From the NCBI RefSeq assembly GCF_016433145.1, contig NC_058131.1:199638463-199702462 (forward strand): a stretch of 64,000 nucleotides of DNA, in the 5' to 3' direction. The notes below the pieces were generated by a model. That model did not search any database. It was not told the DNA's origin and saw only the letters and a list, made by a program, of their open reading frames with translations. Position 1 is the stretch's first letter. Each line of letters begins with the position of its first letter. The stretch comes from Gracilinanus agilis (Eukaryota). Positions 7,409-28,200 of the stretch are shown in pieces. A program made the translations under genes and the position numbers.

Positions 7409-7483
7409 GATATCCTCAGAATCCTTTACACACATCTTTGCTTCACACAATTCCCTTAGCCTGGGATTTGTCCACCTCACTTT

Positions 7484-7664
7484 TTTTCTTTAACCCTTAT
7501 CTACTGTCTTAGAATTGATACTGAGAAGAGTAGTGGGGGCTAGGCAATTGGAGTTAAGTGACTTGCCCAGGGTCACACAGCTAGAAAGTATCTGAGGCCA
7601 AATGTGAACCCCCAGAATCTCATCTCCAAGCCTGGCTCTCTATCCACTGAGCCACTTAGCTGCC
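7484..7664 (-). mobile_element. Opossum-type SINE
   Basis: Reverse SINE body. Confidence 0.85.
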
Positions 7665-8849: not shown

Positions 8850-9240
8850 ATGAGTTTTTTCATATTTTTTCCAGATTAAATGTCAACACAATTTCTTAAT
8901 ATTAATTTTCTGATATTTTGCAATCCATGTCCTCTCCTTCCCCCCCATTCCACTTCCCTCCCCAAGAAGGCAGGTAATGATATAGGTTATAAATATAATA
9001 TCATAAAATACATATTTCCATGTTCTTCATGTTGACAAAAGGAGAAAATTCATGAAAGAAATAAAGTGAAGAATGGAATATTTCAATTTGCTTGCAGACT
9101 TCATCTTTTCTTTCTATGTTGGTAGATATCTTTTTTTTTTTTTTGGTCAATAATCTCTTGGAATTGTCTTTGTTGATAATAGTTGTCATTCATAGTTGAT
9201 CATCATACATTATTTTTTGTTACTGTGTACAATGTATTTG
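8850..9240 (-). mobile_element. L1 3' UTR fragment
   Basis: Reverse complement of L1 3' motifs. Confidence 0.65.
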
Positions 9241-9243
9241 TGT

Positions 9244-9444
9244 TTTTTTTTAAACCCTTACCTTCCATCTTGGAGTCAATACTGTGTATTGGCTCCAAGG
9301 CAGAAGAGTGGTAAGGGTAGGCAATGGGGGTCAAGTGACTTGCCCAGGGTCACATAGCTGGGAAGTGTCTGAGGCTAGATTTGAACCTAGGACCTCCCAT
9401 CTGTAGGCCTGGTACTCAATCCACTGAGCTACCCAGCTGCCCCC
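9244..9444 (-). mobile_element. SINE1_Mdo-like SINE (young)
   Basis: Near-consensus body ending ctacccagctgcccc. Confidence 0.9.
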
Positions 9445-10312
9445 TGTATTTGTGTTTTGAGAGAAGAAATGTCAAACCTTGGAGAGGGTACCAAGATGAA
9501 TGGTACCATAACAAGGAAGTTAGGTTTCAGGGAACACCAGAAGATCTAAAAATTGACAGAAAGCTGGTGAGAATTTTATTAATAACAGTAGAGAGTACAT
9601 TATAAAGGGAAGGCAAAAGTGACTAGGAACCAAAAAAAGCTAGTACTGACCTTACTCTGCTGTGTACCTACCATATGTGGAGAGAGAGTTGAACAAAGTA
9701 GCCAGGATGCATTAAATCTTCCCTGCTCTTCCTCCCACCTACTGACCCCTTGATGATCGCAAATGTTTTACATGGTACAGATGCTCAAGACGTGAGACAC
9801 AATGGTAGCAGACCACTCTGATAGAAGGATGCATTCTAGGTGATAACTGTATTGATCCCAGGACCTTGGAGGCAGCAACTTCATGGCCAAGAAAAGGAAC
9901 CCCCCATCACTTTGCCCTCCCATTAACAAGAGGGTCAAAGCCCTACTGCTAGTTTTGGCTTTGCAGAATCCTGAAATCCTAATAAAAATACTTGTAAAAC
10001 TAGTAACGCTAAACATCTTAGGTTTTCAAAATAGAAGAAAAAGCCAGAAATCAAATGTCTAAATATATTGAAGTTTTTTAAGTTAAAAGTCTGTGCCTGA
10101 TTTAATTCTTCAACATTCTGTCAGTTTTCTTTTTGCAAATGAGTCAATGTGAAAATCTGGATTGTTCTTATAGACCCTTCAAAGAAGAGGTCTAGACCAC
10201 TTTTCTTTTAATTTTCTTGAAACCATGGTCCCAAAGTAATGAGAATAGTATTCATAACCCACAAGGAGAACATTTTCAGCTGAGTGCTAACCAAGTATTT
10301 TCATAGTATTCT

Positions 10313-11029
10313 TGAGGTATGGCCTCTGGGGCACCTGGAACAATTCCTGCTTCTTGTCCAACACTGCCACTTGCTGGTCACCCCTTTTAGTGCTTTCTGC
10401 CATCACAAATTCTCCTGAGCACCAATGGAATTCTATCCAGTCAAATGTTTCTGAGAGCTTCCCCTACACTCCTTGGTGTCCTTCATTCCACCCCCTCTCC
10501 GTGTCTCCACTATGGTTACTTTCTTCCCAAATTTCCATTTATCAAAGGTTTTTGTGTTTATGGAAGTGAAATGATAAATGAATACACTATTGCAATACAC
10601 TTGAGCTCCCATTCCCTGAAGAGACCTCAGACCTCGATGAAGGAGAAATCATAGCCAATCAGAACTATTCTAATTGACATTCCCACAATCCCTTATAGCT
10701 CATGCCAAGAAAATTGCCAAAGGAACCCATGGAAATAGGTGCATACTTTTTTTTTTCCCCAAGAAAAGAAAATACATGCTACCTCAAAACCCTGATCTCA
10801 TATAAGAACTCACAAAGCTTGAAGCTCCAAGAACTGCTCTCAAGTGTTTTTGTGATTTTTAGGCTTAACTACTCTGATACAATCTCCTCCCACTGAACTC
10901 GGAGACTAGGTTCTCCCTGATCTGGCTTGTGAGCCTTTCTCAGAGAATAAATGCCTCTTTCTTTCCTGACTGTTGTCATAAACCTTGTTATAAATTGGTC
11001 CTTTCTAGGCCTGGGTCTTTCTGTGACAA
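10313..11029 (+). mobile_element. Probable solo LTR
   Basis: TG...CA ends, AATAAA near 10946, LTR-like composition. No TSD found. Confidence 0.45.
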
Positions 11030-12079
11030 CTGGTCTAGGTGGTCATGACTCAATTTTTAAGTTCAATGTGCTCTTCAATTAATAATAATGAAGGTGGATG
11101 CATTTCAGGTGGTAGAGGCCATGTGATTATAGGTCTGAAGTGTGTTGATTGTGAAAAGTAGTCCCTAAGAGACCAGAGGACAAACCCTTCATAACACATT
11201 AACATTACATTAACATTACCTAATAAACATCACTTTATATTCTTTATTCCAAATTTTACAAAACGAAATAAAATAGGCATTTCCATATACAAAGGAAGAT
11301 TGTACATAAATCACAGATTTCTTGTACATTTAGCTTACTTTTCTTCAGATCTACAAAATAAATCTATGTTAAACATATGCCAATGAATTAAAAATTTTTA
11401 TCAAGGACTTGGTTGAAGGTAATGAGATGAAGAAAAGCAAGGATATCCAATTCATTAGACCATTGAGGCAGAATATTTTTTTTAAATCTCAACAAGTTGG
11501 AACTATAGGTCAATTTGCTTTCAACCAAGTAGAAAACCCTAGAAAATCCTATCATAGATAAAGGGTAGCAATTTAAGTTTTTGAGGCATTCTGGAGAATT
11601 AAGAAGTTATTTGCTTGCTAATCTGGGTCAGAGGCAGAAAATGAAGTGAGGTCCTCCAAATATTAATGTTATTCTTCCACATATTCTTCCACATTTCGTT
11701 GTCTCATAACAATAATGCACCACATCTGTTAAGATGGACTATAAAGAGGAAACTCAGGTTTAGACAATCACCTGTACAATGGAGGATGCCTGACCAGATA
11801 GGAATTCACGTTGCAAAACCCTTGACATTTCTGTAGATTGTAAAGCTCTAGATAGGAATAAATGTGACATGATAGCCACAAAAAAAAAAAAATTAAACAC
11901 CAACTACTGAGATATTAGGCATATGCCAATAAAAATGTGGTATGAGAATAAGGGAAGTGGGAGAACAATTGTCTTGATCTCTGAATAACCTATATCAGGA
12001 GTTGTGTGTTTAGTTTTGGACATCAGATGGTAGGAAGACATTGATAATTTGGTGATCATTCTAGAAGACAAAAAAAAGT

Positions 12080-12083
<4 letters not shown>

Positions 12084-12110
<27 letters not shown>
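12084..12110. repeat. (AC)n microsatellite
   Basis: Direct observation. Confidence 0.95.
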
Positions 12111-12113
<3 letters not shown>

Positions 12114-14689
12114 TGACAAGGATCAGTTGAAGGAACTGAGCATATTTAGTTTGGAATATATAAGCCTTGAACAAGTATTTGAACAGTTGCAATATGGGAT
12201 GGTAATACCTAATATAGTACTCATAGATAATATAGGGGGAAGGTAGGTGGCATAGTGGATAGAATATTGGACCTGAAGTCAATTAGACTTACCTTCCTGA
12301 ATTCAAATTTGGTCTCAAGAAACCTCCTAGCTGCATGACCCTGGGCAAGTCACCTAACCGTAATTGCCTAGCAACTTACTGCCCTTCATCTTTGGAACTG
12401 ATGCTTAGTATCAATTCTAAGTTAGAAGATAAGGGAGGAAGGGACAAAGGGATACAAGGAAGGAAAACTCCAAATAGGATCATATAGAATTGGACAAAAC
12501 CAAAAGAACTCAAAGAACTTTATACGATTTGCCAAATTTTCATATATGTTATATTTTATTCTCATAACCCTATGAGAGATGTTATCTTTATTTTACAAAT
12601 AAATTGAGGTAGATTGAAATTAAATGCCTTGTGTAACTGATTAAAAACCAGGGCAAGACTTAAACTTGGGTCTTATGTATTTCAAATTGACCTTAAGACA
12701 TTTTAGGAAAAATTGGAAGCTTAAGGGAGGTAAGATTTTGGCTCCATTTAATGAACTTTCCAAGAATTACACTGGGAACTTGTTTTATAGAAACTCAACC
12801 TATGAGAATTCAGGTTTATTCAAGTTGGCAATTGATTATATATAAAATTTTTAACATTTTCCCAGAAAGTGTACTCTTTTTATTAAGAGTTCAACCAGTT
12901 CAACTTCTGAGAGGCCTTGGAGAGTCATTGCATTGTTTTGCACTAGGCATTGGTTTCCCCATAGGTTGTCTGGAGTTCTGATTTATGGCAGTGTCATGCT
13001 CATATAGGAAATCCTTGTTGACATGAGTACCTACTATAGTTTTTTAGTAATGGAATTGACTTCCTTTAAGAGAGGGAATACCTCATTATGAGGTTAGCTA
13101 GCAGAAATTGTTAGGATTTATGTATGGAAATGGATCAAAATGTAAGAAGGCATAATGATTGTCTTGATAACCATTTATTCCTAATATCCAATTTAATTTT
13201 CCCCAATCAAGACACCTTTAGGAGCCCCATTTTGAGAACTCCTAAAACTGAGCTTAAAATATAATAAAATTTAGGTTTTAAGCATTGATAGCAATTGTCT
13301 ATCTCCAAAAGTCAGTGGGAGATATTTCTCCTAACATCCTCAGTTTGTCTTTTAGTAGCATAGCACCTCAACTCATGTCTGAAAGTCTTTGCACTCACTG
13401 GCTCTCTTCTATGCCTGGGAGACAAGTAATTTTAGCATGCTTATAAATTTAGTTCACATGTTGCCTTCTATAAGGAGTTCCATGAGGGTAGCCTTAATGT
13501 CTAGCAGTGACTTACATGGAAAAATAATTTATCTATACCTTTTAGATCACAATTTTTTTTTGCCTCCCCTATTGGCCTTTTCACAATTATTTCCTCTCCT
13601 CCCATAATCCTCCAGCTCAGCACCCATAAAATGCCAAGTGGATAAGTAGATAATAGGTTGCTAGTTAAAGAAACTATTACCCATGAAAGCTATGTATTAT
13701 CATATCAGAGCAACAGCCAGACAGGCTGGCACCCACCCAGCTGAGGTTTTCTCTCTTCATTAGCATTTTTATTGCCATCTTTCCATAAATTTTGGGGCTG
13801 CAGCCCAAGGATAAAGGTTGAGTTGTACCAGGTTCTGTTTCAGTAAGTTAATTCCCAATGACAGAATTAGGACCATTGTTTGAAAGTTACTGTTTCGACA
13901 AGTTTTCAGTTACAAGTCAGGATTTCCCAAAGATAGAACCTGATTGAATAAAGTTCTTATTTGCTAGAGGTCAAGACTTGGATTAAAAACTAAATTGCTA
14001 TTGAGTACAAAGCATGGCCTCAGGTGCTGAGACAAAGATGTTTAAATTTTTGCCCAACTGGAATTTAGTTTACCAATGTATTATAGCCCTAAATCACAAT
14101 TTCTTATGATAAATGTATTAGAATATGCTTTTGTTATACTTTTACCAGCCAGAGGGATTGTGAGATGGTTTCTGGAAGGTGACATTTGAGTTGGGTCTTT
14201 TAAAGGAATTGGTTTTAGGGATATTAGGTAGAAAAGAAGGAGATAGCCATTGACTGTCCAGGTTAAATGTAATGAATAGACAAATATTAAGTATGGGACA
14301 GTAAAGAATATGGCTCTGGACTCATAAGACTCAAGTTTGAATTCTGCCACTTACTACCACTGTGACTTTATTCAAGTTGCAAGAGAAAAATACTCACCTG
14401 AGAAGAGATTACTTATGAGTGTGAATAAGGCTTTGCCTTCACAACCCAGGTCTTTTCTAGCTTCTCCTTAAGATAAAAAAGCTCAAGACACTGGTCTTTA
14501 TCAGAGGATTTGACTTCCCTTTATCTAAAAGAAATAGCTGATGCTACACTAAATTGGAAAGTTTCTACACAAAGGCAATGCAACCTAGGTTAAAAGGGTA
14601 GCTGGAAAAAAAAACTACATAGCACAATCTCTATGACAATGGTTTCTCATACACAGAACTGAATAAAAATTATCAGAATATAGTTTTTC

Positions 14690-15370
14690 CAAACTTGCAA
14701 ATGGTCAAAGGTTGCAAACAAGCATTCTGGGAGAAATTAAAAGCTCTTGTTCAAATGAAAAAGTGCTCTTAATTGCTAGAGAAATGAGAATTAAAATCAT
14801 CCTGAGTCACATCATACCTATCAAAAAGTGAAACATGACAAAAAAGGATAAATATTGGAGGGGACACAGAAAAATTGGGAAACTAGTGCACTACTGGTAG
14901 GAGTCCGGACTAATACAACTATTCTGAGCACAATGTGGAACTACATCAAATCTGTAATGGACGTATGTGCAAGAGACTAAATACAGGGTGAGAAAAAGAC
15001 CCTACCTGTACAAAACATTCATGACAAAAAAGATCACAAAAAACCTGGATAGATGTTTATGAAGGGATACAGTGGATCTAGCAGAATCAGGAGAAAGCTC
15101 TGGTGCCTGTGAATGCTGTTCAAGGTAACAAGGCAAGGACACTCAAGACAACTCCAAGGGACTCATGACAAAGAAAGGAATATCTTATCAACCTAGAAGA
15201 ACCTGAATGCAAATTGAAACATACCATTCAATTTTTTTTAGTGTAAGAAACGTACCTTTTTTTCACAACAGGAACATGAATAACATTTATAACCTTTATC
15301 AACCTGACTTCTTGGGAAGGGAATAATTGTGGGAAGGGTGATGAATAACAAGAATTGTCAACGCATTTAA
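14690..15370 (+). mobile_element. Highly degraded L1 3' fragment
   Basis: Residual ORF2 C-terminal motifs. Confidence 0.6.
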
Positions 15371-15493
15371 ATTTTATCAGTTTTATAACAGAAGACAATG
15401 CTACTCTATACCTCAGAAGAAAATCACTAGGACTTTAGATTAAATGCACCCTATGCTAGGGAGCTCACTTTCCCCTGAATATATTGTGTAAAG

Positions 15494-15659
15494 CAGTGGT
15501 TCTCAAAAATTTTTTGGCCTACCACCCCCTTTCCAGAAAAAATATTACTTAGCAGCCCCTGTCACATTATTATCACTGCCCCCAAATGCACCTATTGCCA
15601 TCACAGCCCCAACTGGATTGCTGCAGCATCCACTAGGTGGCACCCACTTTGGGAATCAC
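15494..15659 (+). mobile_element. hAT MITE, same family as 57066-57258
   Basis: cagtggttctcaaa ... tttgggaatcac, with near-TSD gtgtaaag/atgtaaag. Confidence 0.85.
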
Positions 15660-16204
15660 ATGTAAAGGGAAAGCCTCCACATAATGAGGTCATTATATCA
15701 AGGATAAGAAATTGAGGTGTGGATGTATACAGGGATTCTAGGATTAAGTGATTTGCAGTATTTTGTTCTTAACCCTAATGTGGGGGGGGAGGGGGAGATG
15801 GGGATCCAGGGTGTCTAAGGTGATATTTCTGACAATTCTAACTTTGGATTGAATAGGGATTGGATAGGAGTATGTCCAACATTTGGTTATTCTATTTTGA
15901 AAGGGAAGGTTTTGATAGGCCCCTTGAAAAAAGGATATAATCTTGGTGAGGTAAGAAATCTCTTAAATAAATATGCAGTTAATTTGAAGCCAAACAGAAT
16001 TCAGAAAGGGTAAATATCCAGTTATATGTATATTTTTATATCTAAGTGGTTAGCTTACTATTAATCCTAAATTTCAGAATTCATTAATGGTTGGAACTAC
16101 TTCTTACTACAAAATCAGATCAGTAACAATTTCTAATCAATAGCTGATCCTAAACTGAATTTATTCACTGTAGTTTATACAAACTATTTTTACTATAAGA
16201 ATAA

Positions 16205-16720
16205 ATGCCAGGCCTAGAGACAGGAGGGTCCTAGGTTCTAATATGGCTTCAGACACTTCCCAACTGTGTGACCCTGGGCAAGTCACTTAACTCCAATTGC
16301 CTAGCCCATACTGCTCTTTTATCATGGAACTGATCAATACTCAGTATCCACTCTAAGACAGAAGGTAAGGGTTTATAAAAAAAAAATAAAATAAGTATTT
16401 GTTAAGTGCCTGCTGTATACCTGGTGCTATGAGTTTAACAATCTCAATAAATGCAAAGGGAAAATTTTCCTAAATAAAGGCCAGTTACTGGGGGACAGCT
16501 GGGTGGCTCTCAGTGGATTGAAAGCCAGGCCTAGAGTCAGGAGGTCTGAAGTTCAAATCTGACCTCAGACACTTCCCAGCTGTGTGACCCTGGGCAAGTC
16601 CCTTAATCCTCATTGCCTAGCCCATACCACTCTTCTGGCTTGGAGCCAATACACAGTATTGACTCCAAGACGGAAGGGTTTAAATTTTAAAAAATTAATA
16701 AAATTAAATTAAAATAAAAA
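16205..16720 (+). mobile_element. Two tandem opossum SINEs (16205-16390, 16490-16720) just beyond the RNase H1-like polyA signal
   Basis: SINE bodies with A-rich tails. Confidence 0.88.
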
Positions 16721-16931: not shown

Positions 16932-17006
16932 TCACTTTCTATAAGCTTCTCTAGCTAATTTGTGAGCTTCAGCATTGCCTCCTTTTGAACGAGCAGGAAC
17001 ATACTT
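16932..17006 (-). CDS. RNase H1-like terminal coding exon: KYVPARSKGGNAEAHKLAREAYRK*
   Basis: Acceptor tttttaacag, 75 bp including TGA. Aligns to [24 protein letters not shown]. Confidence 0.92.
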   Translation of the reverse strand, partial: KYVPARSKGGNAEAHKLAREAYRK

Positions 17007-17452
17007 CTGTTAAAAAAAAAAGTTGAAATTTAATTAATCAAGAAATTTAATTTCAACTATTCCCATACCTGTGTAAGGGAAAAACCTTAATCAGTTAGAA
17101 GGCTTAAACCAGAGGTAGCACTCACAAGACATTTTAGAAATGATCCAAATTCACCTCAATCTACCAATAGGGCATGAATGACTTTATACTAATACATAGG
17201 TTCTCTTTTGTAATGCCAAATGAGATTTTAAAACACTTGTCATGCTTTTGGGATATCCTTTACCCCCCCCCTTTTGTTACGCAATTTTTAAAACTTCCAA
17301 ATTAAAGACCATGTAAAAAGAAGAAAATTATGAATTGTATAGGGTCTACCTCAGTCTTAGGATGAAATGGGTATACAATATCCATTTTACAACAGATGAG
17401 GTTATATTGACTTAAAAGTAAGGTTAAAAATTATCTTTGACTGGATTTTTTG

Positions 17453-17673
17453 GGGGGGTCAGCTAAGTGGCTCAGTGGATTGAGCCAGGAAGACAAGTGA
17501 GGGAAATTCTAGTTTCAAATCTGATCTGTAAGAATTAAAATTTAGTTATTATACAACACTTTTTAGCTGTGTGACCCTGGGAGCAAGTCACTTAAACCCC
17601 CATTGCCTATGCCTTAGAATTAATACACAGTATTGATTCTATGATTGAAGGCAAGGTTTTTAAAAAAAAAAAA
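17453..17673 (+). mobile_element. SINE in the last intron of the RNase H1-like gene
   Basis: SINE head gggggtcagctaagtggctcagtgg with A tail. Confidence 0.8.
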
Positions 17674-17901
17674 ACCTAATTTTTTTAAAATAGCTAGGGT
17701 AAAATTCTTAAACTGGTCATTCCTAAATTTTCAAATTGCAAGATCCTATGATTTCCTGACAAATTTATGCATTGTCTTGAAAGCTTTTCACTATCCTGAG
17801 CCTCAAGCAACTTTAAAGACAGACTACACTTTGAGCTTCAATTTCTAGATGTTACCTTGGCTTGTGTTAGAAGAGGAAATTACAACAAAAAATCTCCTCA
17901 C

Positions 17902-18026
17902 CCAGTCAACATCCATGTCCCGAGTCATTTCATCCAACCTAACAAAGTGGTCTTTGTGGACAACATCCGTATTTCTACTTGTTTTCCAATCATTTTCTTT
18001 CCATTTGTTAATCCATTCATTCATTC
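17902..18026 (-). CDS. RNase H1-like exon equivalent to RNASEH1 exon 7 (basic protrusion): (G)MNEWINKWKENDWKTSRNTDVVHKDHFVRLDEMTRDMDVDW
   Basis: Acceptor aattacacag, donor gtgagg, 125 bp, phase 1 to 0. Aligns to [42 protein letters not shown]. Partly visible in ORF-track entry 17845..18075. Confidence 0.93.
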
Positions 18027-21000
18027 CTGTGTAATTAAAAAGATGTCTTACCTTATTTTTTTTCCAATTTTTCAAGGGAAAATACTATATATATTGCCAT
18101 TATTTATAACAGATTATTGCATTTCCCCCATTCCTCATTTGCTAAAGTATCCCCTTTGGTTATCATTTCATACAGATAAAAGGTATTCATGTTCTACATT
18201 GAACCTTTCCATTTCAAACTTATATCATAATAAATGTTTATCTTATATGGGTAACTTTGGTTTTCTTAGGACTAGAGTCAATCTATGGATCAAGGATATG
18301 TGGATGGGGGTCAATCCAGAGCAGGTAAGTATTTCCTGATACAGGTCCTGGTCCCTTACAAACTTAAGACTAATTCCTAATGGCAAAAGAAATCATTATG
18401 TAGTATATAGGATAGAAGCTTTTCCAATATGTTAAGACCTAGCAAAGAACATTCAATAAAAAATATTTTTTGAAACATTTTTGAAGAGCAAAGACTCTTC
18501 AAAAGTCAAAGCCTTTGGAGAAATCAAGGAGTGAAAACACTATTTGGAATTCAAACCCAGTATTCATTGCATGTAGAAGAGGTAGAACTATACTCTCCAT
18601 TTTAATGATGTAGAACACTAGTTTCAGCAAGGGCAACTAGCTGGTAACTACAAAGAAGGTTAGGACTAGAATACAGAATTCTACTCAGTCCTCAGAACAT
18701 CCTACAAGAGCAACAACTCTTATATATTACTTTTAACACTATTAATACTGAGGGGATCCTCTTTAATTTTTGAAACCTATCCCAGCAGGGGCATAGCTAT
18801 AAGGTTTGGTTATAGAAGGGTTCCCAGCATCAAACTAAGTTGCTCTATCACTGGTTATAGGTATTAGGTAATTTATTTTGGGGCTCCTTGGGCAAAAGAG
18901 GGCCCAGTTTCCAGGGTTGTAGTGAGAATATGCAACTGCTTAGTTCCTTCATTTTGTAAAGAAGGGAAACTGAATGCAAGGTACTAAATGACATCTCAAA
19001 TGTCCCAAAGCACTAAATGACAGAGGTAGAAGTCAAAGCCAACACCTTCCAAACTCATTATTCCTACCCTTGGTACCACACATTGCTACCTAGACATCCC
19101 TGGTTACATGAATGACAATACAAAAGAGAAAATAAATGGGCTAAGAACATATGACAAGCAGTTCAGATGTCCAAGTCACAGAACCAGCCTATTGGTTCCT
19201 CTAAGTCGGACAAGAACTACAGATGGAGGACGTGATAGATGGCAAACAGTAGGTTGATGGAATTACACTTGGGAAAATTTCAGTACATTTAAGGATGTAA
19301 GCTCCTCCATAGGGTGGGACAAATGCCCATAATCACAAATGTTTTCCCAGTAATTTTGTGTGGTTGATCATATGCCAAAAATGTAATAGTGAGGAAAACA
19401 ACAGATAAAGTGTGTGAGAATTTTTTGCAAAATAAAGATATGTTTGGAGTGGGAATCTGGGGAGTAAAGATGCATGCCCATACTCACTGAAATGGACAGA
19501 GTAGACCAGATAGAATGCAGCTTTTATTGCTTGTAGTACAAGGACAGTGACCCAAGGCAATGACAAGATACAATGCTCTTTAAGTCATCACCACCTGTAT
19601 TATATTTTATATTGTCTCTCCTTTTTCCCTACTTCCCCCAAGTTTCCCAGCACTTCCTGAACAAGTGGACTATTTCTCAAATTAGTTCCAGAATATACAG
19701 AAATATTCAATAAGAAACATTTTTTGTCAATGTAAGTCTCTTTACCAAGGAAAGAGTTGACTGTATTTTTCCATTGTAACTTAGGCCTTCAGGTCTTCTA
19801 GAGTCTTTATATCTTTTAACCTGGTTTCTCAGGACTCTTTAAATGTTGATTAAAGGCATTGTCAGGCTCAGTAAGAAATCACAAGGGAAGGGGAGATGTT
19901 ACGGGTAGGTCTTTCCATAAATTTTGTTGAGTGGTGGGGGTCCTGGTTCCATGTCAGCCAAAAAGGTCTTTTATGGCTTTATGACAAAGACAGGATATCT
20001 TTGAACCTCTTTCCTCCTGAAAGGCCTCAACTTCTGGGGTTTCCAGGGATACTGATCTTAAATTACTAATATTGCTCCTATTGCTATGCTAACTAATACA
20101 TTTAGAATATACCACTAATTCTCACTCTACATAACTATATAGGATAAGGCTTTGGAAGGGGCTGCATAGATGAAAAAGTACACTTACAATGATGAACCAT
20201 TTATTGAAGTGTCAAACTTTAGCAAAGCAATTTTTTCACAGCAGTTTAGAACTGCTATTAAAAGATGTGCTTATTGAAGGTGTAGGTGAACCTATTTTTC
20301 ACCTTTCTATTATCCTCCCCTGGCACAATATGAGTGCTACAGGTAACCAAGTGGAAATCAAGACTCAGGTAAGTGACTTGATCAATTTCACTATTCTATA
20401 ATGACAGTCCATTCCAGGGTTCTATCAACCAGTATCAGCCATAAGAAAATCACATTAATATTCAAGAAGGTTGGACCCTTAGAAAATATTCTTATTCCAG
20501 AGAAAGACCCTAGAATCAAGATTTAAAAAGCTGGAAAAAGTCTTAAAGAGGTTGAGTCCAACCCATTCCTCAGACTCACTTGAGTTAAGCAACTTGCCTA
20601 AGAAAAGAGTAGGAAGAACATATTTGAACCAAAGTCTGTAGACTCTAAAATCTATCAAGATCTCAAAGTACTCAAACAACTTCTCATTCTAGCCTGGCAA
20701 GCCTCATTCCCATGCACTCTTAAGTTTCTCATAAGTCTATTATCTTCCCTTTAGCATCTAAAATTTAACCATTAATCTTTCCTTGGGTCTTCCTTGGCTC
20801 TTTTTCATTGCCACTGTACCCTACCCATCCTTCCTTCCTAACCCTGACCATAACAATTTATTTTTTAAATCCTTCCTAAACCAGGGTTATATGCTATCTT
20901 TTCTTTTTGAACTAGAACCTCATTTATGTTGGTATGCCCTGAAACATAGAAAGAGATAAGGAATCTTAAATTCAAATCTCTTCAACTTATCTTCTACCAT

Positions 21001-21276
21001 TCCTCATTTTAACAGATAAGGAAATTGAGACACCAAATAGATGGTGACTTCAATGCCTAACAGCTTTCGGTCAGTAGCAGAAATAGGTCCAGGTCTCCAG
21101 ACATCCCAACCTTCTTGCCCTTCAAAAGAAATGTGATTTAAACTAGATGGTTGTCTTAAGACTTTAGTATTTCTTGTAGTTTTATCCTTTTTGCTAGGCA
21201 TTTTGGACAGTGATGAATTTCTCTTTTCTTCACTTAAATACTATAGTATGCATACCCAAAGTAGTACAAAGCTTAC

Positions 21277-21361
21277 CTTTGGTGACAAGTTGATTATCCG
21301 AGTACACAGTGACTCTTGGAAGGTTTTGGGCCTTAGCTTGCTCAATCCCCTTGGTAGCTGC
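21277..21361 (-). CDS. RNase H1-like exon equivalent to RNASEH1 exon 6: AATKGIEQAKAQNLPRVTVYSDNQLVTK(G)
   Basis: Acceptor attttttaag, donor gtaagc, 85 bp, phase 0 to 1. Aligns to [29 protein letters not shown]. Confidence 0.93.
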
Positions 21362-22740
21362 CTTAAAAAATAATTGTAAAAGGTATGAAATTTCAATTTT
21401 CACCCTTCTAATTTATAAGTAAAAAGGAATTAGGAATGCATATTGAGATACGTCTCAAGCGAGTTAAGACTAGGTACGTCCAAGAACTTTTCTAAGCTCT
21501 TAAATCTGATTCTAGGACAATTAATCCCCAGAAAACCCCTTCCAAGATGGTTGAGGTTATCCTTTATTAAGATGAGGAGTCTTATGCCATCCATACCCCA
21601 CTAATTCTGAAACCTTAAATTGTGAAACCATCAGCTTCCTTCCTCTTTCCCCATCTGTTAAAATGAGAAGAGATAAAATTTGTACAACCAATGACAAGAC
21701 TGTTGTGAATAAGTGAATATAATCATGAATAGGAAGGACCACAGGTGGAAATTACAAGTGGGCAGGTAATTCAAGTCCAATCCTAATAATACACCTTTAA
21801 AATTGCAACATGGAATAGTGTGAAGAAGTAAAGAACAGTGGAGTAGAAGTCAAGTAAGAAATCAAGAATGTTTATGGTTGTTAAAAGAATTGGAGATTTG
21901 AGTTGGAGAAAATCCCTTCCCAGGTTGTCATTAAATCAATAAGCAAAAAGTGCCTCCCCTATTTACTAGACACAATGCCAGGTGTAGTAATACCACAACC
22001 CAACCCTAAGAAGAGAATCCTGGCTCTGGAAGGGACAGGATATTATTCCTTTGGTCCTTCCCCTGCGTTTCACCTCAACCTGCATCACCCAAGAAGGATG
22101 TTCCCTGGTCCCAGCTATTTACATGATGGGATTTGCCAAGGGATCTAGGAATGTGCTAGTTCTTTACATAGTGCAAAGGAAAAAATATTCTGACAGCAAG
22201 TGGGTAATAAGGCATAGAAGAGGCAGAGCAGATGACAGACCAGATGTTTCTCAGCAACTCTAGTGGTGGTTAGAGGCAGACAACTGGAAAAGTCAGAGGG
22301 AAGTGGCAATGGAGATGGTTTGGAGGCTCCACTTGAATAGGGTTTTAGTAGTAGGGAACAGACTCAGTACTTTTAGTTATCCTTTATAATCTTAATTCCC
22401 ATTATTGTTATGCTACATTAACTATATACTTGCTATACACTAGTAGTGGGGTGGTAGGGAAACCTTAATAAGGCAATTTCAATACAAACTTACATGCTAT
22501 CAGAGGAAACATGAATATAGCAAATCAATATAAGGTAATTTGTAATGAGGAGATGTGAATTTAAGCTCTCTCTTCCTATTCCTTGGGATAAGAATTGGAA
22601 GGACATTGTCAATGGGAGGCTGTATGTTTGCAAGTTTTTTCCTTTTCCCTGGGAAGGGAGCAAGACTTTCCAAATATTTATTCCTATTCTTGGTGCCTTT
22701 CCAAATTCCCTAGATATAGAATACTTTAAAATACAAGCAT

Positions 22741-22950
22741 GGGGACAACAGCTAGGTGGCTCAGTGGATTGAGTCAGGTCTAGAGATGGGAGGGAAGTCC
22801 CGAGTTTAAATCTGCCCTAGACACCTTTTTCCTGTGTAATCCTAGCCAAGCCACTTTTAACTCCCATTACCTAGCCCTTACTCCCCACTCCCTCTCTGCC
22901 TTGAAACCAATAATACTGATTTTCCAAGACTGGTTAAGGGCTTAAAAACT
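22741..22950 (+). mobile_element. Intronic SINE
   Basis: SINE head ggggacaacagctaggtggctcagtgg. Confidence 0.8.
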
Positions 22951-23701
22951 TTAAAACCAGTAGGACAAATACACTCATGAATAAATGGCAGCTAGGTGAC
23001 AGTGAATAGAATGATGACCTTAAGAAGACCTTAAGTCATTCAAAAATCCTGCCTCAAGACACTAAAATTGTGAGACCTTGAGCAATCACTGAATCTCAAC
23101 CTCAATTTTCCTCATCCTTAAAATGTGATTAGTACTTATCTTCCACAGTTGTTGTGGGGATCAAAATAAAGACCATGAGCATAAAAAAGCAAATTGCAAT
23201 CCTATACAGAAATGCTGGCTATACATTGAACATTCCCAGACAAAACTTCCAAGACAAGTACACTGTATACAATAACAATCTGCTAAAGCAGGTTATTTTG
23301 GAGTAAACTGGCACCTCAAATCATAGTGCTGTTAACCCTCACAGAGAAAAGAATTTTGAAATCAATTTTTAATATTAAGACCTCACTGTTGTTTTTGCCT
23401 TTTAGATACAAGATAGAAGAAACTGTATAACTTGAAACTTATCAAAGGGAAAATAAAAACCTAAAATGACAAACTTCAGAATCATTTTTCTCTTCTAAAG
23501 ATCAAGACCTATTAAGATTTGGGATTTTGGTTTTAAGATTACTCTATTACAAAAATGAACATGGAAGTATTGAGTGATAATACTCAATAAAATTGCTTGT
23601 CAATCTCGAGGAGGGGAGGAAGAGAACATGAATTATGTAACCATGGAAAAACACTTAAAAAAAGAAATTTTAAAAATAAAAGATCAAGACCTGTAACTTA
23701 C

Positions 23702-23756
23702 TTCTAATGAAGCAGTTTGGTTTGTCTGCCGTCCAGAATATGTACTACTTGTGTTT
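23702..23756 (-). CDS. RNase H1-like exon equivalent to RNASEH1 exon 5: NTSSTYSGRQTNQTASLE
   Basis: Acceptor tttaaacag, donor gtaagt, 55 bp, phase 2 to 0. Contains the GRQTNQ motif of RNase H1. Confidence 0.92.
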
Positions 23757-23981
23757 CTGTTTAAAAAAATAAAAAAACACAAAAGAGCAAGACAGTGCGG
23801 ACTAGAACAATTTGGATTCTATATTGTTTAATAGCCAATACATTGGTTTCATATTTCAAGCTTTACTACTAGGAATCACCCACTCTGTAAAACAATGCAT
23901 ACCAATGGCCCTAGGTATTGTTTTAATAGCTGGCTCTCTTGTATTTGAGTCAATTACTTAGGTATGAGAACTAAATGCTAT

Positions 23982-24186
23982 AGAACAGCTGGGTGACTCT
24001 GGATTGAGAGTCAGGCCTAGAGATGGGAGGTCCTCAGTTCAAATCTGACCTCAGACACTTCCTAGCTGTGTGACCCTGGGCAAGTCATTTAACTCCCATT
24101 GCTTAGCCCTTACTGCTACTTCTGCCTTAGAACCAATACACAGTATTGATTCTAAGATGGAAGGTAAGGGTTTAAAAAAAAAAAAG
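23982..24186 (+). mobile_element. Intronic SINE1_Mdo-like SINE
   Basis: Consensus-like body and A tail. Confidence 0.88.
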
Positions 24187-24287
24187 AAATGCTATTGGTC
24201 TTCCAATTAATTCAACTGTCCTTCATTTTTTCAGTACAATGCACTGAAAAAGGATAATTTTGGAGCTTGCTTCATGACTTGTGTAGG

Positions 24288-24518
24288 AGGGGCCAATTAA
24301 AAGTGGCTCAGTGGATAGGGCCAGACCTGGAGATGAGAGGTCAGGAGTTCAAATTTGATACTCCTTGTGTTTCTGTTTAAAAAAATAAAAAAACAGATAC
24401 TTCCTGCATGTATAAGCGCCCCCTGGGCAAGTCACTTAACCCAGCCATTACCTAGCCCCCTTACCACTCCTTCTAACCATAGTGTTGAATCTAAAACAGA
24501 AACTAAAGGTTTAAAAAA
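24288..24518 (+). mobile_element. Intronic SINE carrying a 32-bp foreign insertion
   Basis: SINE body interrupted at 24364-24395 by an exact copy of 23748-23779. Confidence 0.85.
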
Positions 24519-24533
24519 TGTTTGTGTACTTAC

Positions 24534-24624
24534 AGATCATTGGCTTCTGGCCAGAAGACACCTATACCTCCTCGGGCCCCTTCTCTTCCATTATTTTTGC
24601 AAGCACCCTTGGTATATACAGGGT
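24534..24624 (-). CDS. RNase H1-like exon equivalent to RNASEH1 exon 4: (D)PVYTKGACKNNGREGARGGIGVFWPEAND(L)
   Basis: Acceptor ttttacag, donor gtaagt, 91 bp, phase 1 to phase 2. Aligns to VVVYTDGCCSSNG...RAGIGVYWGPGHPL. An alternative in-frame acceptor (cattgcag) would extend the exon to 24639. Confidence 0.88.
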
Positions 24625-25347
24625 CTGTAAAACATATTTCTGCAATGTATTACTTAAATGAGATTGTGGAAGAAAAGTTAAGTTTTTTTTGTTTGAAATC
24701 TAGCTTTGCATGAGAAGTAACCAAGATTTTTATTCCTTAGAGATTAGGCTAGTTTTAATGCTCCACTCAGGATGCCCAGGTCAGGCTCCCAACCGAAACC
24801 TTCTAGGGATTTAAATATCAAGAGCAAAAAAATGTCCAAAATTCCCGAGGTCTAAATTTTAATCTGTCTTATGGAAACCTCATTAGGTGCCAGCCAGTCA
24901 GGGGATTGCTTCCTGATTCCTTAGCTTGAATCCTAAATATTTGACTCATGGAAGGTTAGTGGGAACCTGTGACCACTGACTCTCCTCCCCACCTTTTGCT
25001 AGACTTAATAAAACTATGAAAGTCTTAAAAACTTAAGAACAAAACTCAGAAGTAAATTTTTACACCCTTTCTGCCACTCCCAAAGATAACGTTGTAGAAT
25101 AAGTGATTTTATGCTCTAAGTCCTTATTTGGGGATAGACTAAATTAAATCCTGGTGGTCCTAAATAGCCCAGAGAGGCTCTTTACATTTTTAAAGGAATC
25201 ATTTTGCAGTGTATTTAAGCTCTGGGGAGGTGGGTGGGGTGGCGATAACCTCCTCCCAAATGAAAATTCAGAGTCAAAGTATGAGTTTTTAGTTTTCTCA
25301 TGAAAAAGGCACTACACACCTGACAATGGGAAAAGTGCTCAACAAGC

Positions 25348-25740
25348 ACCGGGCTTCACAGATGGGGCTTCACGGCGGGGGGTGTGGGGGGTTCTCGCAA
25401 ACCGGCCCGCGGCCGCCCCTCCCCCATGACCACAATTAGGGCGCGTGAGGGGGGGTAACCCGCAGCCGCCTCCTCACAACTCCAAGCCAGAGCCCCAGGA
25501 ATGATGAAAGACGAGATCCAAAGCCGGCCTCTCTCACTAGCAGATAAGTAACCTAAGCTCTTGGGCTTCAAAGTTTCGTCATTGTTACGGGTATACGGAG
25601 GGGAAAAAAATAGTGTCTGACGGGGCGGTAATGAAAGAAACTACCTCGGTTGGGCACTTTGCAAACCTGCAACTGCCGCCTATTTTCTCGTATAGATCCG
25701 AGTTTTCATTGCTTAGAGCAAAGGCAGGGGATGCGGTCCA
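25348..25740 (-). promoter_or_regulatory. Small CpG island, likely promoter of the RNase H1-like gene
   Basis: 24 CpGs counted in ~390 bp of an otherwise CpG-depleted window. GC box GGGGCGG at 25622, two TGACG CRE half-sites, ~0.75 kb upstream of the first identified exon. Confidence 0.7.
25403..25427 (-). CDS. Candidate first coding exon of the RNase H1-like gene (MGEGRPRA + phase 1)
   Basis: Good Kozak context gtggtcATGG inside the CpG island. The phase-1 donor CCG|GTTTGC would join in frame to the exon at 24624, but it is a weak donor. Confidence 0.2.
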
Positions 25741-26444
25741 AGTTAACAAAGTGAATCTGCAAATTTAAAATCTTTAATTGCCTGGACCAGTAAGAGGGCA
25801 AGCTCAGGAGTGTCAAGAGGAAGACAGGGCAGAAAGCCAGTCTTCATTAGAGAAATATCCACTGGCAGTATATGAATCAATGTAGTTTTAAAATTTCGTT
25901 CTAGATCCTATTACTTATGACATATAGGTATATTACACATATGGCTACACATATTTATCTAAGTCATTACACCTTTATCCATTATTAGAACATGCAGGTT
26001 CTTTTTTTTTTTTTTTTTTTAATTAAAATGCTTAGGGGCTTACTATGAGGTGCCTACAGGAGCTTCCAAATTTTGTATTAAGAGATTAGAGGGCTGGAAT
26101 GATCCCCTAACATCTAGTCCCCTTTTTACGGAGGGATGATCCCAGGGTCCTAGACACGAAAACCACTTGCCCAAGGACACTCAAAATTTGTTAAAAGTAG
26201 CAGATCCAGAATCCATATCCTGGGCCTGCCTCTAAATCAAACATGAATATTTAATGTAAGACATAAAATTAAGGATTCCTTATACAAATATACTGCAGGG
26301 AGTAGCTTGGTCAATGAGTCAGTCATTCTAGTCCTTAGAAGAATGAGTATTTTTAAAGAATATACTAAAATTTGCTATTTTGGTTTGTACTTCCCTAGAC
26401 TTGAGTTTGCAATTTCTCCTACTTCCTAAATATTTCTATCTGAT

Positions 26445-26648
26445 TTTTTTTCTAAGCTTTACCTTCTGTCTTAAGACTCAATACTGTGTATTGGTTCTAA
26501 AGCAGAAGAATGCTAAAAGGTGGTGGTGGGGGGGGGTGTCAAGTGACTTGCCCACGGGGGTCACACAGCTTGGGAAGTGTCTTGAGACTAGATTTGAACC
26601 TAGGACACCAGACTCTAGGCCTGGCTCTCAATCCACTGAGCTGCCCCT
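26445..26648 (-). mobile_element. Opossum SINE
   Basis: Reverse SINE body. Confidence 0.85.
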
Positions 26649-26983
26649 ATACCAATGATTATGAGCAACTAAGTTATTAACCTCTCTGGGTCAGTTTTCT
26701 AATCTGTTAAAATGAAGTAGGTGGACTAGAATTTTAGATCTGAAGCTGGAATAGCTTAGATCATCTAGTATAATCTCAGTTTGCAGAAAAGGAGGCCCAA
26801 CAATAAGAGAATTACAAACAGGCTGTACAGGTCATCTAAAGGCAGTGGAAGGACATGAGCCCATATCACAAACTCAAGGTTGAGTAGCCTATCTATAGAC
26901 TGTATCCTGCGGGCTCCTCTAGAGATCATCACCACCAAATTGTTAATGGGGGTGGGGGAAGATAACTTTAACTTGAAGGCACA

Positions 26984-28200
26984 TGTGGAAGCATCCTTTA
27001 TGGATTTTAAGAAGGGTCATGGCAGACTCCCTACTAAAGTTTCCTAACATTAAATGTGAGCCTAGTGCCCCTTACCCAGAATATAAACAAGCTAAGGCAG
27101 AATGTAACTGCAATGGGTTTAGATTCAAAGGAATTAACTCCCTAACCCAACTGTTGGGCTGTCATTTAACCTTTTTACAATTCAGTGAGTCAATTTTCTG
27201 ATTTTTCTGATTGTTATGTAAAATGGGGCTAGGGATAAGATTAAATGTGGCCTGTTAAGACTCATTCAAGCTTCAAATCTTTACAGACATGACTGGGAAA
27301 AAAGCCTTGTGAGAAAGACAGGGGAGACAGATAAGACTAGGCTTCTGCCTCAACCTCTTTTGGGGGACCCTACTCTAGTTGTCCCGGGACACCCCTCCTC
27401 AATTCTTTTGGGGGCTTACCCGATCCTTGGTGCAGATGCTCATTCCAACCTCCAGAGCCTCTACTCTGCCAGCCATGGCTAGATCTCCCAGAGTCCTGCT
27501 GATAACGATTCCAACTCATTTCTCCAAAGGTTTGGAAAGAAAAAGAGATCCTGACCTTCAGAGTATATGAACTCCCCAGCTGAAAGCCAAGCAGTTTTAA
27601 AAAGCTGAGGAAGATAGTGGGTGGGACTCCAAACTACAACCCAGACTCCACCCCTCCTCCCCTACTCCCACCCCCCAGTTTTTAATCTTTGAAAAAAAGT
27701 TTTTTTTGTAAAACCTTAGTCCAACTCTAAATAAATTGGGTGGCTTGAGGGAATTTGTTTTCCCCTCAGGCCAGTCTTCTTTTACTCTTGGTTTTATAAC
27801 TGCCTATAGGTGCCAATAGCTGCCAATAGCTGCCTATAACTGCCTATAACTGCCTATAACTGTCTATAACTGCCTACAACTGCCATTAGAGAAAGTCCAG
27901 CTGATCACCCTTCAGCTCAGCTCACCAGGCAGAATCAATATATTATATCTATCAATATATTATCTCTTTCTCCCAACCACCAAATAATCACCAACCCCCA
28001 CCACCAGCAACCAAGCCCCAAGGACCAACTACCTCCCAGCCCAAAATGGTCAAAAATGCCCTTCTCAGGGCTCACACTGGCCTTTTATAGCCTCTTCCTA
28101 CCTCACTTCCTGTTTCTCTGGCTTCTACTTCTTTTCACTGTGGGCTGGAATATCTTTACACATCTCTATGATAAAAGGACCTCCAGGACCCCAGTTAAAT
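26984..28200. mobile_element. ERV/LTR-derived segments, mostly minus orientation
   Basis: Two segments end in atctttaca (TGTAAAGAT on minus). Minus-strand TATAAAA near 28083. LTR/leader-like composition. Confidence 0.45.
27796..27885. repeat. Tandem repeat, 9 x 10-bp unit TATAACTGCC
   Basis: Nine consecutive units with few substitutions. Confidence 0.95.

What the first reader, a model, noticed from the sequence alone, without database searches (positions are those of the whole stretch)
16932..24624. Catalytic residues lost but hybrid-binding surface kept: candidate pseudo-RNase H
Manual alignment with human RNase H1 numbering (recalled): YTDG to YTKG (D145K), RAEIH to TASLE (E186S), VPGH to VPAR (H264R), EEAD to AEAH (D274H). 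Only D210 (YSD) remains. Substrate-contact residues C148, N151, R179, T181, N182, Q183, W221, W225 and S233 are retained, and N240 becomes H. Acidic metal ligands replaced by K/H/R could bind phosphate without Mg2+. Inference: a non-cleaving RNA:DNA-hybrid binder that might protect or mark R-loops, antagonise RNASEH1, or bind retroelement reverse-transcription intermediates.
Basis: partly seen in the sequence, partly recalled or inferred. Interest (0 to 1): 0.95.

Follow-up and report, generated by a model that had tools for sequence, protein, structure and literature searches.

The report
Marsupial catalytically dead RNase H1 paralogue
All marsupials examined keep an expressed, intron-containing copy of the RNase H1 gene that lost most of its catalytic residues long ago but kept its RNA:DNA-hybrid contact residues, so it is probably a natural non-cutting hybrid binder that nobody appears to have studied.

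Summary
On the minus strand, 16932-24624 holds five GT-AG exons of an RNase H domain. A sixth, first coding exon lies at 27420-27519, outside the finding. The 176-aa product is the annotated 'ribonuclease H1-like' protein of Gracilinanus agilis.

Tool alignments to human RNase H1 confirm D145K, E186S, H264R, D274H and N240H. D210 and the named contact residues are kept.

- It is not a decaying copy. Ten marsupial species from four orders share K145, S186, D210 and H240.
- The reading frame and all splice sites are intact in the five genomes checked.
- Pairwise dN/dS is 0.30-0.66.
- A brushtail possum cDNA contig matches the spliced model exactly.
- The intact, canonical RNASEH1 lies 2.7 Mb away on the same chromosome.
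- New here: sloth, anteater, aardvark, sirenians and elephants carry the orthologue of this short paralogue, which lacks the hybrid-binding domain (HBD). The full-length ones (all but the truncated anteater prediction) have an intact active site, so the loss is specific to marsupials and old.

The best reading is a selected pseudoenzyme that binds hybrids without cutting them. Binding itself is inferred, not shown.

Novelty: new variant of a known kind. Interest: about 0.68.

The parts
16932..27519 (-). Coding span of the gene: 6 coding exons and 5 introns. It is the 'ribonuclease H1-like' gene of Gracilinanus agilis (XP_044515497.1, 176 aa).
   Evidence: P0001 is identical to the spliced window model. 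Locus L001 is identical to the window over 30,588 bases, and the exon map comes from exact protein-to-genome matching.
27420..27519 (-). Coding exon 1 (100 nt, ends in phase 1). It encodes 33 residues rich in S, G, W, Q and Y, predicted disordered, with no HBD and no recognisable domain. It lies outside the finding's range.
   Evidence: pLDDT is below 50 for residues 1-30. There is no Pfam hit other than RNase_H.
24534..24624 (-). Coding exon 2 (91 nt). It encodes the first beta strands and carries K at human position 145 (codon 24608-24610), C148, K149 and N151.
23702..23756 (-). Coding exon 3 (55 nt). It carries R179, T181, N182 and Q183, all kept, and S at human position 186 (codon 23708-23710).
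21277..21361 (-). Coding exon 4 (85 nt). It encodes helix A and the strand with the retained D210 (codon 21296-21298). F213 is L.
17902..18026 (-). Coding exon 5 (125 nt). It encodes the basic protrusion with W221, W225, T232 and S233 kept. N240 is H.
16932..17006 (-). Coding exon 6 (75 nt, including the stop codon). It encodes the His-loop and last helix. H264 is R (codon 16989-16991) and D274 is H (codon 16962-16964).
24625..24639 (-). Possible in-frame alternative acceptor 15 nt upstream of exon 2. It would add 5 residues, like isoform X1 of Antechinus and Sarcophilus.
   Evidence: The sequence was read. Its use in this species has not been shown.

Best explanation
This is a protein-coding paralogue of RNASEH1 that arose by DNA-level duplication, so its introns are retained.

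It encodes only a short disordered N-terminus plus a complete type-1 RNase H fold. It has no mitochondrial presequence, no hybrid-binding domain and no linker.

In the marsupial stem lineage it lost the two-metal active site. D145 became K and E186 became S, and both are fixed. H264 and D274 were lost and are now free to vary. Only D210 is kept.

It has since been maintained by purifying selection as a pseudoenzyme.

The most likely mechanism is that the domain still docks on RNA:DNA hybrids. It would do so through the conserved phosphate-binding pocket (R179, T181, with H at 240), the DNA channel (W221, W225, T232, S233) and the RNA-side contacts (C148, N151, N182, Q183). It cannot hydrolyse the RNA strand, so it would occupy or mark hybrids rather than remove them.

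Shown: gene structure, loss of catalytic residues, retention of contact residues, age of the loss, selection, and transcription in at least one species.

Inferred: hybrid binding, absence of any residual activity, and every cellular role.
For: Gene model and identity:
-.
- Exons 2-6 correspond to exons 4-8 of the canonical gene. The phases are the same and the three internal exons have the same lengths, 55, 85 and 125 nt.
- The canonical RNASEH1 of the same animal is intact (HBD plus RNase H, 286 aa). It lies 2.7 Mb away on the same chromosome in the same orientation.

Residue mapping.

Conservation of the changes:
- Ten marsupial species from four orders have K145, K149, S186, E188, D210 and H240, while positions 264 and 274 vary.
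- The codons for K145 (AAG) and S186 (TCA/TCT) are shared and lie two base changes from Asp and Glu codons. This points to single old events.

Selection:
- The five genomes checked have the same six-exon GT-AG structure with no stop or frameshift.
- Pairwise dN/dS is 0.30-0.66, and 8 of 10 bootstrap intervals lie below 1.
- Roughly 19-23 nonsense changes are expected under neutrality, and none is seen.

Expression: a brushtail possum cDNA contig equals the spliced CDS and adds a 5' non-coding exon. The koala isoform is also present in a run-level (Logan) assembly.

Fold: the AlphaFold2 model has pLDDT above 90 over the domain. Its best structural matches are human RNase H1-hybrid complexes, with TM 0.90-0.93 and rmsd 1.4-1.6 A.

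Binding surface:
- 8 of 9 literature binding residues are unchanged in all nine paralogues, P = 0.001.
- The domain stays basic, pI 9.2-9.8.

Precedent: a single active-site change makes human RNase H1 inactive but still hybrid-specific, and the catalytic domain on its own prefers hybrids over dsRNA (PMC8266564).
Against: - No binding or activity data exist.
- The protein lacks the HBD, which established work credits with raising the affinity and processivity of RNase H1. An HBD-less domain may therefore bind weakly.
- Two DNA-side positions are changed: F213 to L and N240 to H.
- 21 of 50 positions that are conserved across the family are not kept in all nine marsupial copies. In the orthologues of Atlantogenata (the placental group of sloths, anteaters, aardvark, sirenians and elephants) the figure is 8 of 50.
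- The protein evolves about six times faster than canonical RNASEH1. This would also fit a shift to another ligand or partner.
- The structural model was built from an alignment dominated by active enzymes, so it cannot show that the groove is still competent.
- The tissue and level of expression are unknown.
Confidence: 0.5

Rival explanations
1. The protein is still a nuclease, using a non-canonical one-metal or metal-independent chemistry built from D210 and the fixed lysines at 145 and 149.
For: - D210 is invariant in all marsupial copies, and K145 and K149 are fixed.
- Position 274 is basic (R, H or K) in 6 of the 9 aligned species (R3 Q3 H2 K1).
- The active site of E. coli RNase H has been engineered into an active 'metal-independent' enzyme (Casareno et al. 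1995, cited in PMC8930831).
Against: - K149 is also present in the catalytically intact Atlantogenata orthologues, so it is not a compensating novelty.
- Positions 264 and 274 vary freely, which a working active site would not allow.
- One active-site substitution is enough to inactivate the human enzyme (PMC8266564).
- E188 is the ordinary residue of active frog and lamprey relatives that also have E186.
Confidence: 0.1
2. The fold has been re-used for something other than hybrids. It could be a protein-protein adaptor or regulator, or a binder of another nucleic acid such as dsRNA or single strands. In that case the retained 'contact' residues are kept mainly for folding.
For: - There is no HBD.
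- 21 of 50 family-conserved positions are changed in at least one marsupial copy, including F213L and N240H on the DNA side.
- The marsupial stem branch is long and evolution stays fast.
Against: - The a-priori binding set is kept far better than the rest of the domain (8 of 9 against 50 of 143). It is also kept better than family-conserved positions in general (32 of 56 kept in all nine).
- W221, W225 and R179 are surface residues with no known role other than substrate contact. This rests on established structural work on 2QK9 as summarised in PMC8960830.
Confidence: 0.25
3. It is a non-functional remnant: a decaying duplicate, a processed pseudogene, a retroelement RNase H, or an annotation artefact.
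For: - Four of the five catalytic positions are lost.
- dN/dS is moderately high, and two of the ten pairwise intervals touch 1.
- The name and gene model come from automatic pipelines.
Against: - Five introns sit at the same positions and phases as in RNASEH1, so it is not processed or retroelement-derived.
- The best matches are cellular RNase H1, not reverse transcriptases.
- The frame and splice sites are intact in the five genomes checked, and the product is predicted in ten species. The species span the deepest marsupial split, between American and Australasian marsupials.
- About 20 nonsense changes are expected if the gene were neutral, and none is seen.
- A cDNA contig is spliced exactly as predicted.
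Confidence: 0.03

Closest known systems
Canonical vertebrate RNASEH1 (here P0123 of G. agilis; human structures 2QK9, 2QKK, 6VRD)
   Same: - Same catalytic-domain fold (TM about 0.9).
- 48% identity over the domain within the same animal.
- Same five exon borders and phases.
- Same hybrid-contact residues.
   Different: - No mitochondrial presequence, HBD or linker.
- D145, E186, H264 and D274 are replaced.
- It evolves about six times faster.
HBD-less 'ribonuclease H1-like' proteins of Atlantogenata (sloth, anteater, aardvark, dugong, manatees, elephants; 162 aa)
   Same: - They are the apparent orthologues, with 93% bootstrap support for the joint clade.
- Same plan of one N-terminal exon plus five domain exons.
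- Shared K149 and N150.
- Found on the same chromosome-scale contig as RNASEH1, judged by matching contig lengths in dugong and elephants.
   Different: - The full-length ones keep D145, E186, D210, N240, H264 and D274; the anteater prediction is cut off before 264 and 274.
- The four full-length ones compared keep 43-45 of 50 family-conserved positions, against 32-36 in marsupials.
- They are presumably active enzymes.
Engineered catalytically dead human RNase H1 (D210N), used as a probe for RNA:DNA hybrids
   Same: An RNase H1 domain that binds hybrids but does not cut them (PMC8266564). This is the working model for the marsupial protein.
   Different: The probe is man-made, carries a single substitution at the one carboxylate that the marsupial protein keeps, and includes the HBD. 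The marsupial protein is natural, has four positions replaced and has no HBD.
Short RNase H1-like paralogues of frogs and lamprey (with or without HBD)
   Same: - Small size.
- An N-terminus rich in S, G, R and Y, with similar first residues in Discoglossus and sloth.
- The same five domain exons.
   Different: - The active site is intact.
- The N-terminus is encoded by two exons, not one.
- They sit beside rnaseh1 and an ADI1-like gene.
- Their relationship to the therian (marsupial plus placental) paralogue is unresolved, with 17% bootstrap.
Connection domain of retroviral reverse transcriptases (a degenerate RNase H fold; cited from my own knowledge, not tested here)
   Same: An RNase H fold that has lost its catalytic residues but is kept for a nucleic-acid-holding or structural role.
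   Different: It is part of a viral polyprotein and has no detectable sequence similarity to this gene. The gene here is a cellular, intron-containing, stand-alone protein.

Membership tests
Type 1 RNase H domain (Pfam PF00075) | Sequence match above the family's gathering score over the whole domain | tested here: met
   92.2 bits against a cutoff of 25.8, covering profile positions 6-139 of 141. E = 4e-39 to the human RNase H1 catalytic domain.
Type 1 RNase H domain (Pfam PF00075) | RNase H fold: a five-stranded sheet with helices, including the basic protrusion | tested here: met
   Predicted model only. Domain pLDDT is above 90. Target-normalised TM is 0.90-0.93 and rmsd 1.4-1.6 A to 2QK9, 2QKK and 6VRD. 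W221 and W225 are kept.
Active RNase H1 enzymes | Four metal-binding carboxylates (D145, E186, D210, D274 in human numbering) | tested here: not met
   Only D210 remains. The others are K, S and H here, and K, S and variable in all marsupials.
Active RNase H1 enzymes | Histidine of the flexible loop (H264) | tested here: not met
   R here; R, W, G, S or Y among marsupials.
Active RNase H1 enzymes | Cleavage of the RNA strand of a hybrid | not testable with these tools
   No biochemical data exist. No paper on this gene was found.
Canonical eukaryotic RNASEH1 orthologues | N-terminal hybrid-binding domain (PF01693) and connection domain | tested here: not met
   P0001 has no PF01693 hit, whereas the canonical P0123 of the same species has one at 72.7 bits. 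The canonical gene is a separate locus 2.7 Mb away.
Therian HBD-less RNASEH1-like paralogue group (marsupials plus Atlantogenata) | One short N-terminal coding exon plus five domain exons, shared K149 and N150, and monophyly | tested here: met
   The shared residues are. NJ bootstrap is 93% for the joint clade and 100% for marsupials.
Hybrid-binding surface of RNase H1 | Phosphate-binding pocket (R179, T181, N240) and DNA/RNA contact residues (N151, N182, Q183, F213, W221, W225, T232, S233) | tested here: inconclusive
   10 of the 12 residues are unchanged in all nine marsupial paralogues compared; the tenth species shares H240. N240 is H and F213 is L. The residues are present, but binding itself was not tested.
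Processed pseudogene or retroelement RNase H | No introns, adjacent reverse-transcriptase or integrase coding sequence, disrupted frame | tested here: not met
   There are five introns at RNASEH1 positions. The frame is intact. The nearest retroelement piece is an unrelated L1 fragment at 34903-35795 on the other strand.

The most novel reading that the evidence does not exclude
Marsupials carry a dedicated, naturally evolved 'reader' of RNA:DNA hybrids. It would be an RNase H1-derived pseudoenzyme that binds hybrids without destroying them, and so stabilises, shields or flags R-loops or other hybrids. It would have been kept for the whole of crown-marsupial history. Placentals either kept the same gene as an active nuclease (Atlantogenata) or apparently lack it (no Boreoeutherian copy found). 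It would be the first natural counterpart of the laboratory dead-RNase H1 probes.
Probability: 0.4. Interest if true: 0.85.

Novelty: new variant of a known kind. Interest (0 to 1): 0.68.

Why it matters
RNase H1 is normally thought of as a single, essential, strongly conserved gene in mammals.

This locus shows a second, short paralogue with three different apparent fates:
- No copy was found in Boreoeutheria (most placentals, including human and mouse).
- It is kept with an intact active site in Atlantogenata.
- It has become a conserved catalytically dead protein in marsupials.

A naturally selected non-cutting RNase H domain would be a new kind of player in R-loop and hybrid biology. It would also be a natural experiment on which residues are needed for hybrid recognition as opposed to catalysis.

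It also gives a clean, datable example of how a pseudoenzyme arises. Two catalytic positions became fixed in new states. Two others were released from constraint. The binding residues stayed frozen.

No paper on the gene was found in the held library, so it appears to be known only as an automatic annotation.

Tried and rejected
- **Pfam on single exons.** Only exon 5 gave a weak RNase_H hit, because the pieces are too short. A spliced protein could not be typed in, so I searched with exon 5 alone. That search returned the annotated product P0001.
- **First structure prediction.** With a 12-sequence alignment the model was poor (pLDDT 57). I replaced it with a 60-sequence alignment.
- **First NJ tree.** Without the Atlantogenata sequences, the marsupial clade was placed with the outgroups at 12-42% support, a long-branch effect. 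Diagnostic sites split 35:39 between canonical and 'short' relatives. The profile search resolved this.
- **Identity of the downstream neighbour.** In tammar it is a 1487-aa LRR plus Ig protein. The matching window region has no clear first exon. 'Peroxidasin-like' remains my guess and is not a result.
- **Flank synteny between elephant and the window.** Only repeats align.
- **Rfam.** Nothing was found in the window.
- **Literature.** Five searches found no study of this gene. The two Nowotny papers on human RNase H1 structure are not held. The contact list therefore comes from PMC6846478 and PMC8960830.
- **Rejected readings.** These are a processed pseudogene, a retroelement RNase H, recent lineage-specific decay, and E188 substituting for E186.
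  - Measuring side-chain geometry in the model, because no coordinates are available to scripts.
  - Naming the tissue of the cDNA run.

Full report
**What is in the window.**
- The window is AT-rich mammalian DNA, 35-42% G+C, with three N runs. I left the N runs untouched.
- They lie in five exons: 24624-24534, 23756-23702, 21361-21277, 18026-17902 and 17006-16932.
- Each exon has an AG acceptor, and each exon that is followed by an intron has a GT donor. The phases fit, and joining them gives an open frame ending in a stop at 16932.
- The finding's coordinates are exactly the first base of exon 2 and the last base of the stop codon.

**Which gene it is.**
- A spliced protein had no reference, so I searched with exon 5 alone.
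- In the PDB it hits the human RNase H1 catalytic domain.
- In the 1.8-billion-protein library the top hit is a 176-aa protein that is 100% identical over exon 5. It is identical to the whole spliced model.
- This protein is XP_044515497.1, 'ribonuclease H1-like' of the agile gracile opossum, Gracilinanus agilis.
- The genomic locus fetched for it is identical to the window over 30,588 bases. It places the start codon at 27519.
- That exon encodes 33 residues rich in Ser, Gly, Trp and Gln, predicted to be disordered.
- The only Pfam domain is RNase_H, at 92.2 bits. There is no hybrid-binding domain.

**Check of the residue claims.**
- The phmmer alignment of the protein to PDB chains of human RNase H1 (E = 4e-39) has one single-residue gap.
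- Chain 6vrd_A carries eight extra N-terminal residues, so chain index minus 8 gives human numbering. D145 confirms this.
- With that alignment:
  - D145 is K, E186 is S, D210 is kept, H264 is R and D274 is H.
  - C148, N151, R179, T181, N182, Q183, W221, W225 and S233 are kept.
  - N240 is H.
- Further fixed differences from active relatives are S149K, H188E, F213L, G235N, G263A, G266K and G280A.

**It is a duplicate gene, not the canonical one.**
- The same chromosome carries the canonical RNASEH1: 286 aa, HBD plus RNase H, all catalytic residues intact.
- It lies 2.7 Mb away in the same orientation.
- It has eight coding exons of 131, 116, 156, 100, 55, 85, 125 and 93 nt.
- Exons 2-6 of the paralogue correspond to its exons 4-8. 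The phases are the same (1, 2, 0, 1, 0) and three of the lengths are the same.
- The copy therefore arose by DNA duplication, not through an RNA intermediate or a retroelement.

**Conservation in marsupials.**
- Orthologues of 176-182 aa are annotated in ten species of four orders:
  - Didelphimorphia: Gracilinanus, Monodelphis.
  - Diprotodontia: Notamacropus, Vombatus, Phascolarctos, Trichosurus.
  - Dasyuromorphia: Antechinus, Sarcophilus, Sminthopsis.
  - Peramelemorphia: Macrotis.
- All have K145, K149, S186, E188, D210 and H240.
- Position 264 is R, W, G, S or Y, and position 274 is H, R, Q or K.
- In the five genomes I could fetch, the K145 codon is AAG and the S186 codon is TCA or TCT. 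Each is two base changes from an Asp or Glu codon.
- The simplest reading is that both changes happened once, before the split between American and Australasian marsupials. By common dating (my knowledge, not computed here) that is roughly 70-80 million years ago.

**Selection and expression.**
- I mapped each protein exactly onto its genome in Gracilinanus, Monodelphis, bilby, tammar and brushtail possum.
- All five have the same six coding exons, all introns are GT-AG, and there is no stop or frameshift.
- Pairwise Nei-Gojobori dN/dS is 0.30-0.66 for the whole CDS and 0.38-0.76 for the domain.
- For the whole CDS, 8 of the 10 bootstrap intervals lie entirely below 1.
- With a synonymous tree length of 0.79, and 5.5-5.9% of single-base changes creating a stop, about 19-23 nonsense changes would be expected under neutrality. 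None is seen.
- A 1311-base contig from a public sequencing run of brushtail possum contains the CDS without introns, base for base. It also has a 5' non-coding exon 4.3 kb upstream and a 3' UTR of about 600 bases, so the gene is transcribed and spliced as predicted.
- The koala isoform also occurs in a run-level assembly. The tissues are unknown.
- The protein evolves fast. Domain divergence between Gracilinanus and Antechinus is 24.5%, against 4.2% for canonical RNASEH1.

**Pattern of what is kept.**
- I used 42 catalytically intact relatives as the reference set: 24 canonical RNASEH1 proteins and 18 short RNase H1-like proteins.
- Of 56 domain positions that are at least 95% conserved in that set:
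  - 32 are kept in all nine marsupial paralogues.
  - 7 are replaced by one fixed residue (145, 186, 235, 240, 263, 266, 280).
  - 17 vary.
- An independent list of heteroduplex-binding residues of the human catalytic domain is N151, R179, N182, Q183, F213, W221, W225, T232 and S233 (PMC6846478).
- It is kept at 8 of 9 positions in all nine paralogues. Overall, 50 of 143 positions are kept. The hypergeometric P is 0.001.
- The phosphate-binding pocket and the Trp stacking on deoxyribose are the recognised means by which RNase H1 selects hybrids (PMC8960830).
- The domain remains basic, with pI 9.2-9.8.

**Structure.**
- With a 60-sequence alignment, AlphaFold2 gives pLDDT above 90 over residues 31-176 and a disordered N-terminus.
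- Foldseek ranks human RNase H1-hybrid complexes first (6VRD, 2QKK, 2QK9, 2QKB), with TM 0.90-0.93, rmsd 1.4-1.6 A and 44% identity.
- The alignment is dominated by active enzymes. The model therefore shows that the fold is compatible, not that the groove works.

**Orthologues outside marsupials.**
- A profile of the nine marsupial proteins finds, directly after them, HBD-less 'ribonuclease H1-like' proteins. They are 162 aa in sloth, aardvark, dugong, manatees and both elephants, and 145 aa (a truncated prediction) in anteater.
- They share K149 and N150 with the marsupial proteins.
- The elephant gene has the same plan of one N-terminal exon followed by five domain exons, with the same phases.
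- They group with the marsupial clade in 93% of NJ bootstraps.
- All the full-length ones keep D145, E186, D210, N240, H264 and D274. The four full-length ones compared keep 43-45 of 50 family-conserved positions, against 32-36 in marsupials.
- The paralogue therefore predates the marsupial-placental split. The loss of the active site is specific to marsupials, and the marsupial stem branch is markedly longer.
- I found no Boreoeutherian member. The searches cover predicted proteins only, so this is 'not found', not 'absent'.

**Deeper origin.**
- Frogs have many short RNase H1-like genes, with or without an HBD, and lamprey has an HBD-less one. All have intact active sites.
- The first residues of the Discoglossus and sloth proteins are alike.
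- However, the frog and lamprey N-termini are encoded by two exons.
- The frog genes also lie beside rnaseh1 and an ADI1-like gene.
- The tree does not resolve the relationship, with 17% bootstrap. I leave it open.

**Interpretation.**
- Shown: a transcribed, selected paralogue with the RNase H1 fold that cannot carry out the canonical two-metal reaction and has conserved the residues that contact the hybrid.
- Inferred: it binds RNA:DNA hybrids without cutting them.
- Support by analogy: one active-site substitution inactivates human RNase H1 while leaving hybrid-specific binding. The catalytic domain itself also discriminates hybrids from dsRNA (PMC8266564).
- The fixed K145 next to the invariant D210 may replace the metal as a charge partner or touch the scissile phosphate. 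This is conjecture.
Positions 264 and 274 vary freely, and K149 predates the loss.
- A residual metal-independent activity cannot be excluded, since there is an engineered precedent (Casareno et al. 1995, via PMC8930831). I rate it as unlikely.
- A shift to another ligand or a protein partner is the main rival.

**Comparison with what is known.** The gene is a member of the type-1 RNase H domain family by sequence and predicted fold. It is not an RNASEH1 orthologue, and it fails the defining catalytic features of the active enzymes. The closest functional analogue is the laboratory D210N probe. I found no publication on the gene.

**Limits.**
- I have no binding or activity data.
- The tissue of expression is unknown.
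- Coordinates of the model were not available for geometry.
- The trees are distance trees only.
- DNA was available for five marsupials and one placental.

Noticed in passing
window 43650-44102, between the N runs 43336-43649 and 44103-44258: The part 43650-44033 is 97.7% identical to the tammar wallaby flank (L004 1-381), against 66-80% for the rest of the flank. It has no long open frame. It looks like an ultra-conserved non-coding element next to masked sequence. The N runs were left alone.
   Followed up: partly
window 34903-35795 (+): Two overlapping ORFs of 165 and 143 aa look like the C-terminal part of an L1 ORF2, a retrotransposon fragment unrelated to the gene.
   Followed up: no
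window 13579-13922: This is a conserved block about 3 kb downstream of the stop codon, 79-85% identical to tammar, brushtail possum and bilby. That is higher than most of the surrounding non-coding DNA. It could be a regulatory element or an exon of the next gene.
   Followed up: no
window about 9455-10400 (-); L004 22857-28692: In tammar, a 1487-aa LRR plus Ig-domain gene starts 4.2 kb downstream on the same strand. The aligned window region shows no clear first exon. A peroxidasin-like identity is my guess only.
   Followed up: partly
window 24625-24639 (-): There is an in-frame AG acceptor 15 nt upstream of exon 2. It would add five residues, matching the extra residues of isoform X1 in Antechinus and Sarcophilus.
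   Followed up: partly
window, e.g. 16207-16694, 23985-24185, 41750-41946, 48889-49072, 56748-56931: Many copies of one SINE-like repeat hit one another and the opossum flanks. They are ordinary marsupial interspersed repeats.
   Followed up: no
L008 (Xenopus tropicalis) 1-16498; L010 (Eleutherodactylus coqui) 10001-38512: Frogs carry tandem extra RNase H1-like genes with intact active sites. One with an HBD lies 4 kb downstream of rnaseh1. An HBD-less one lies just upstream of an ARD/cupin (ADI1-like) gene.
   Followed up: partly
L006 (brushtail possum cDNA contig) 1-146 and its 3' end: The transcript has a 5' non-coding exon 4.3 kb upstream of the start-codon exon, and the contig ends in a sequencing-adapter-like tail. 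The corresponding 5' exon was not located in the window.
   Followed up: no
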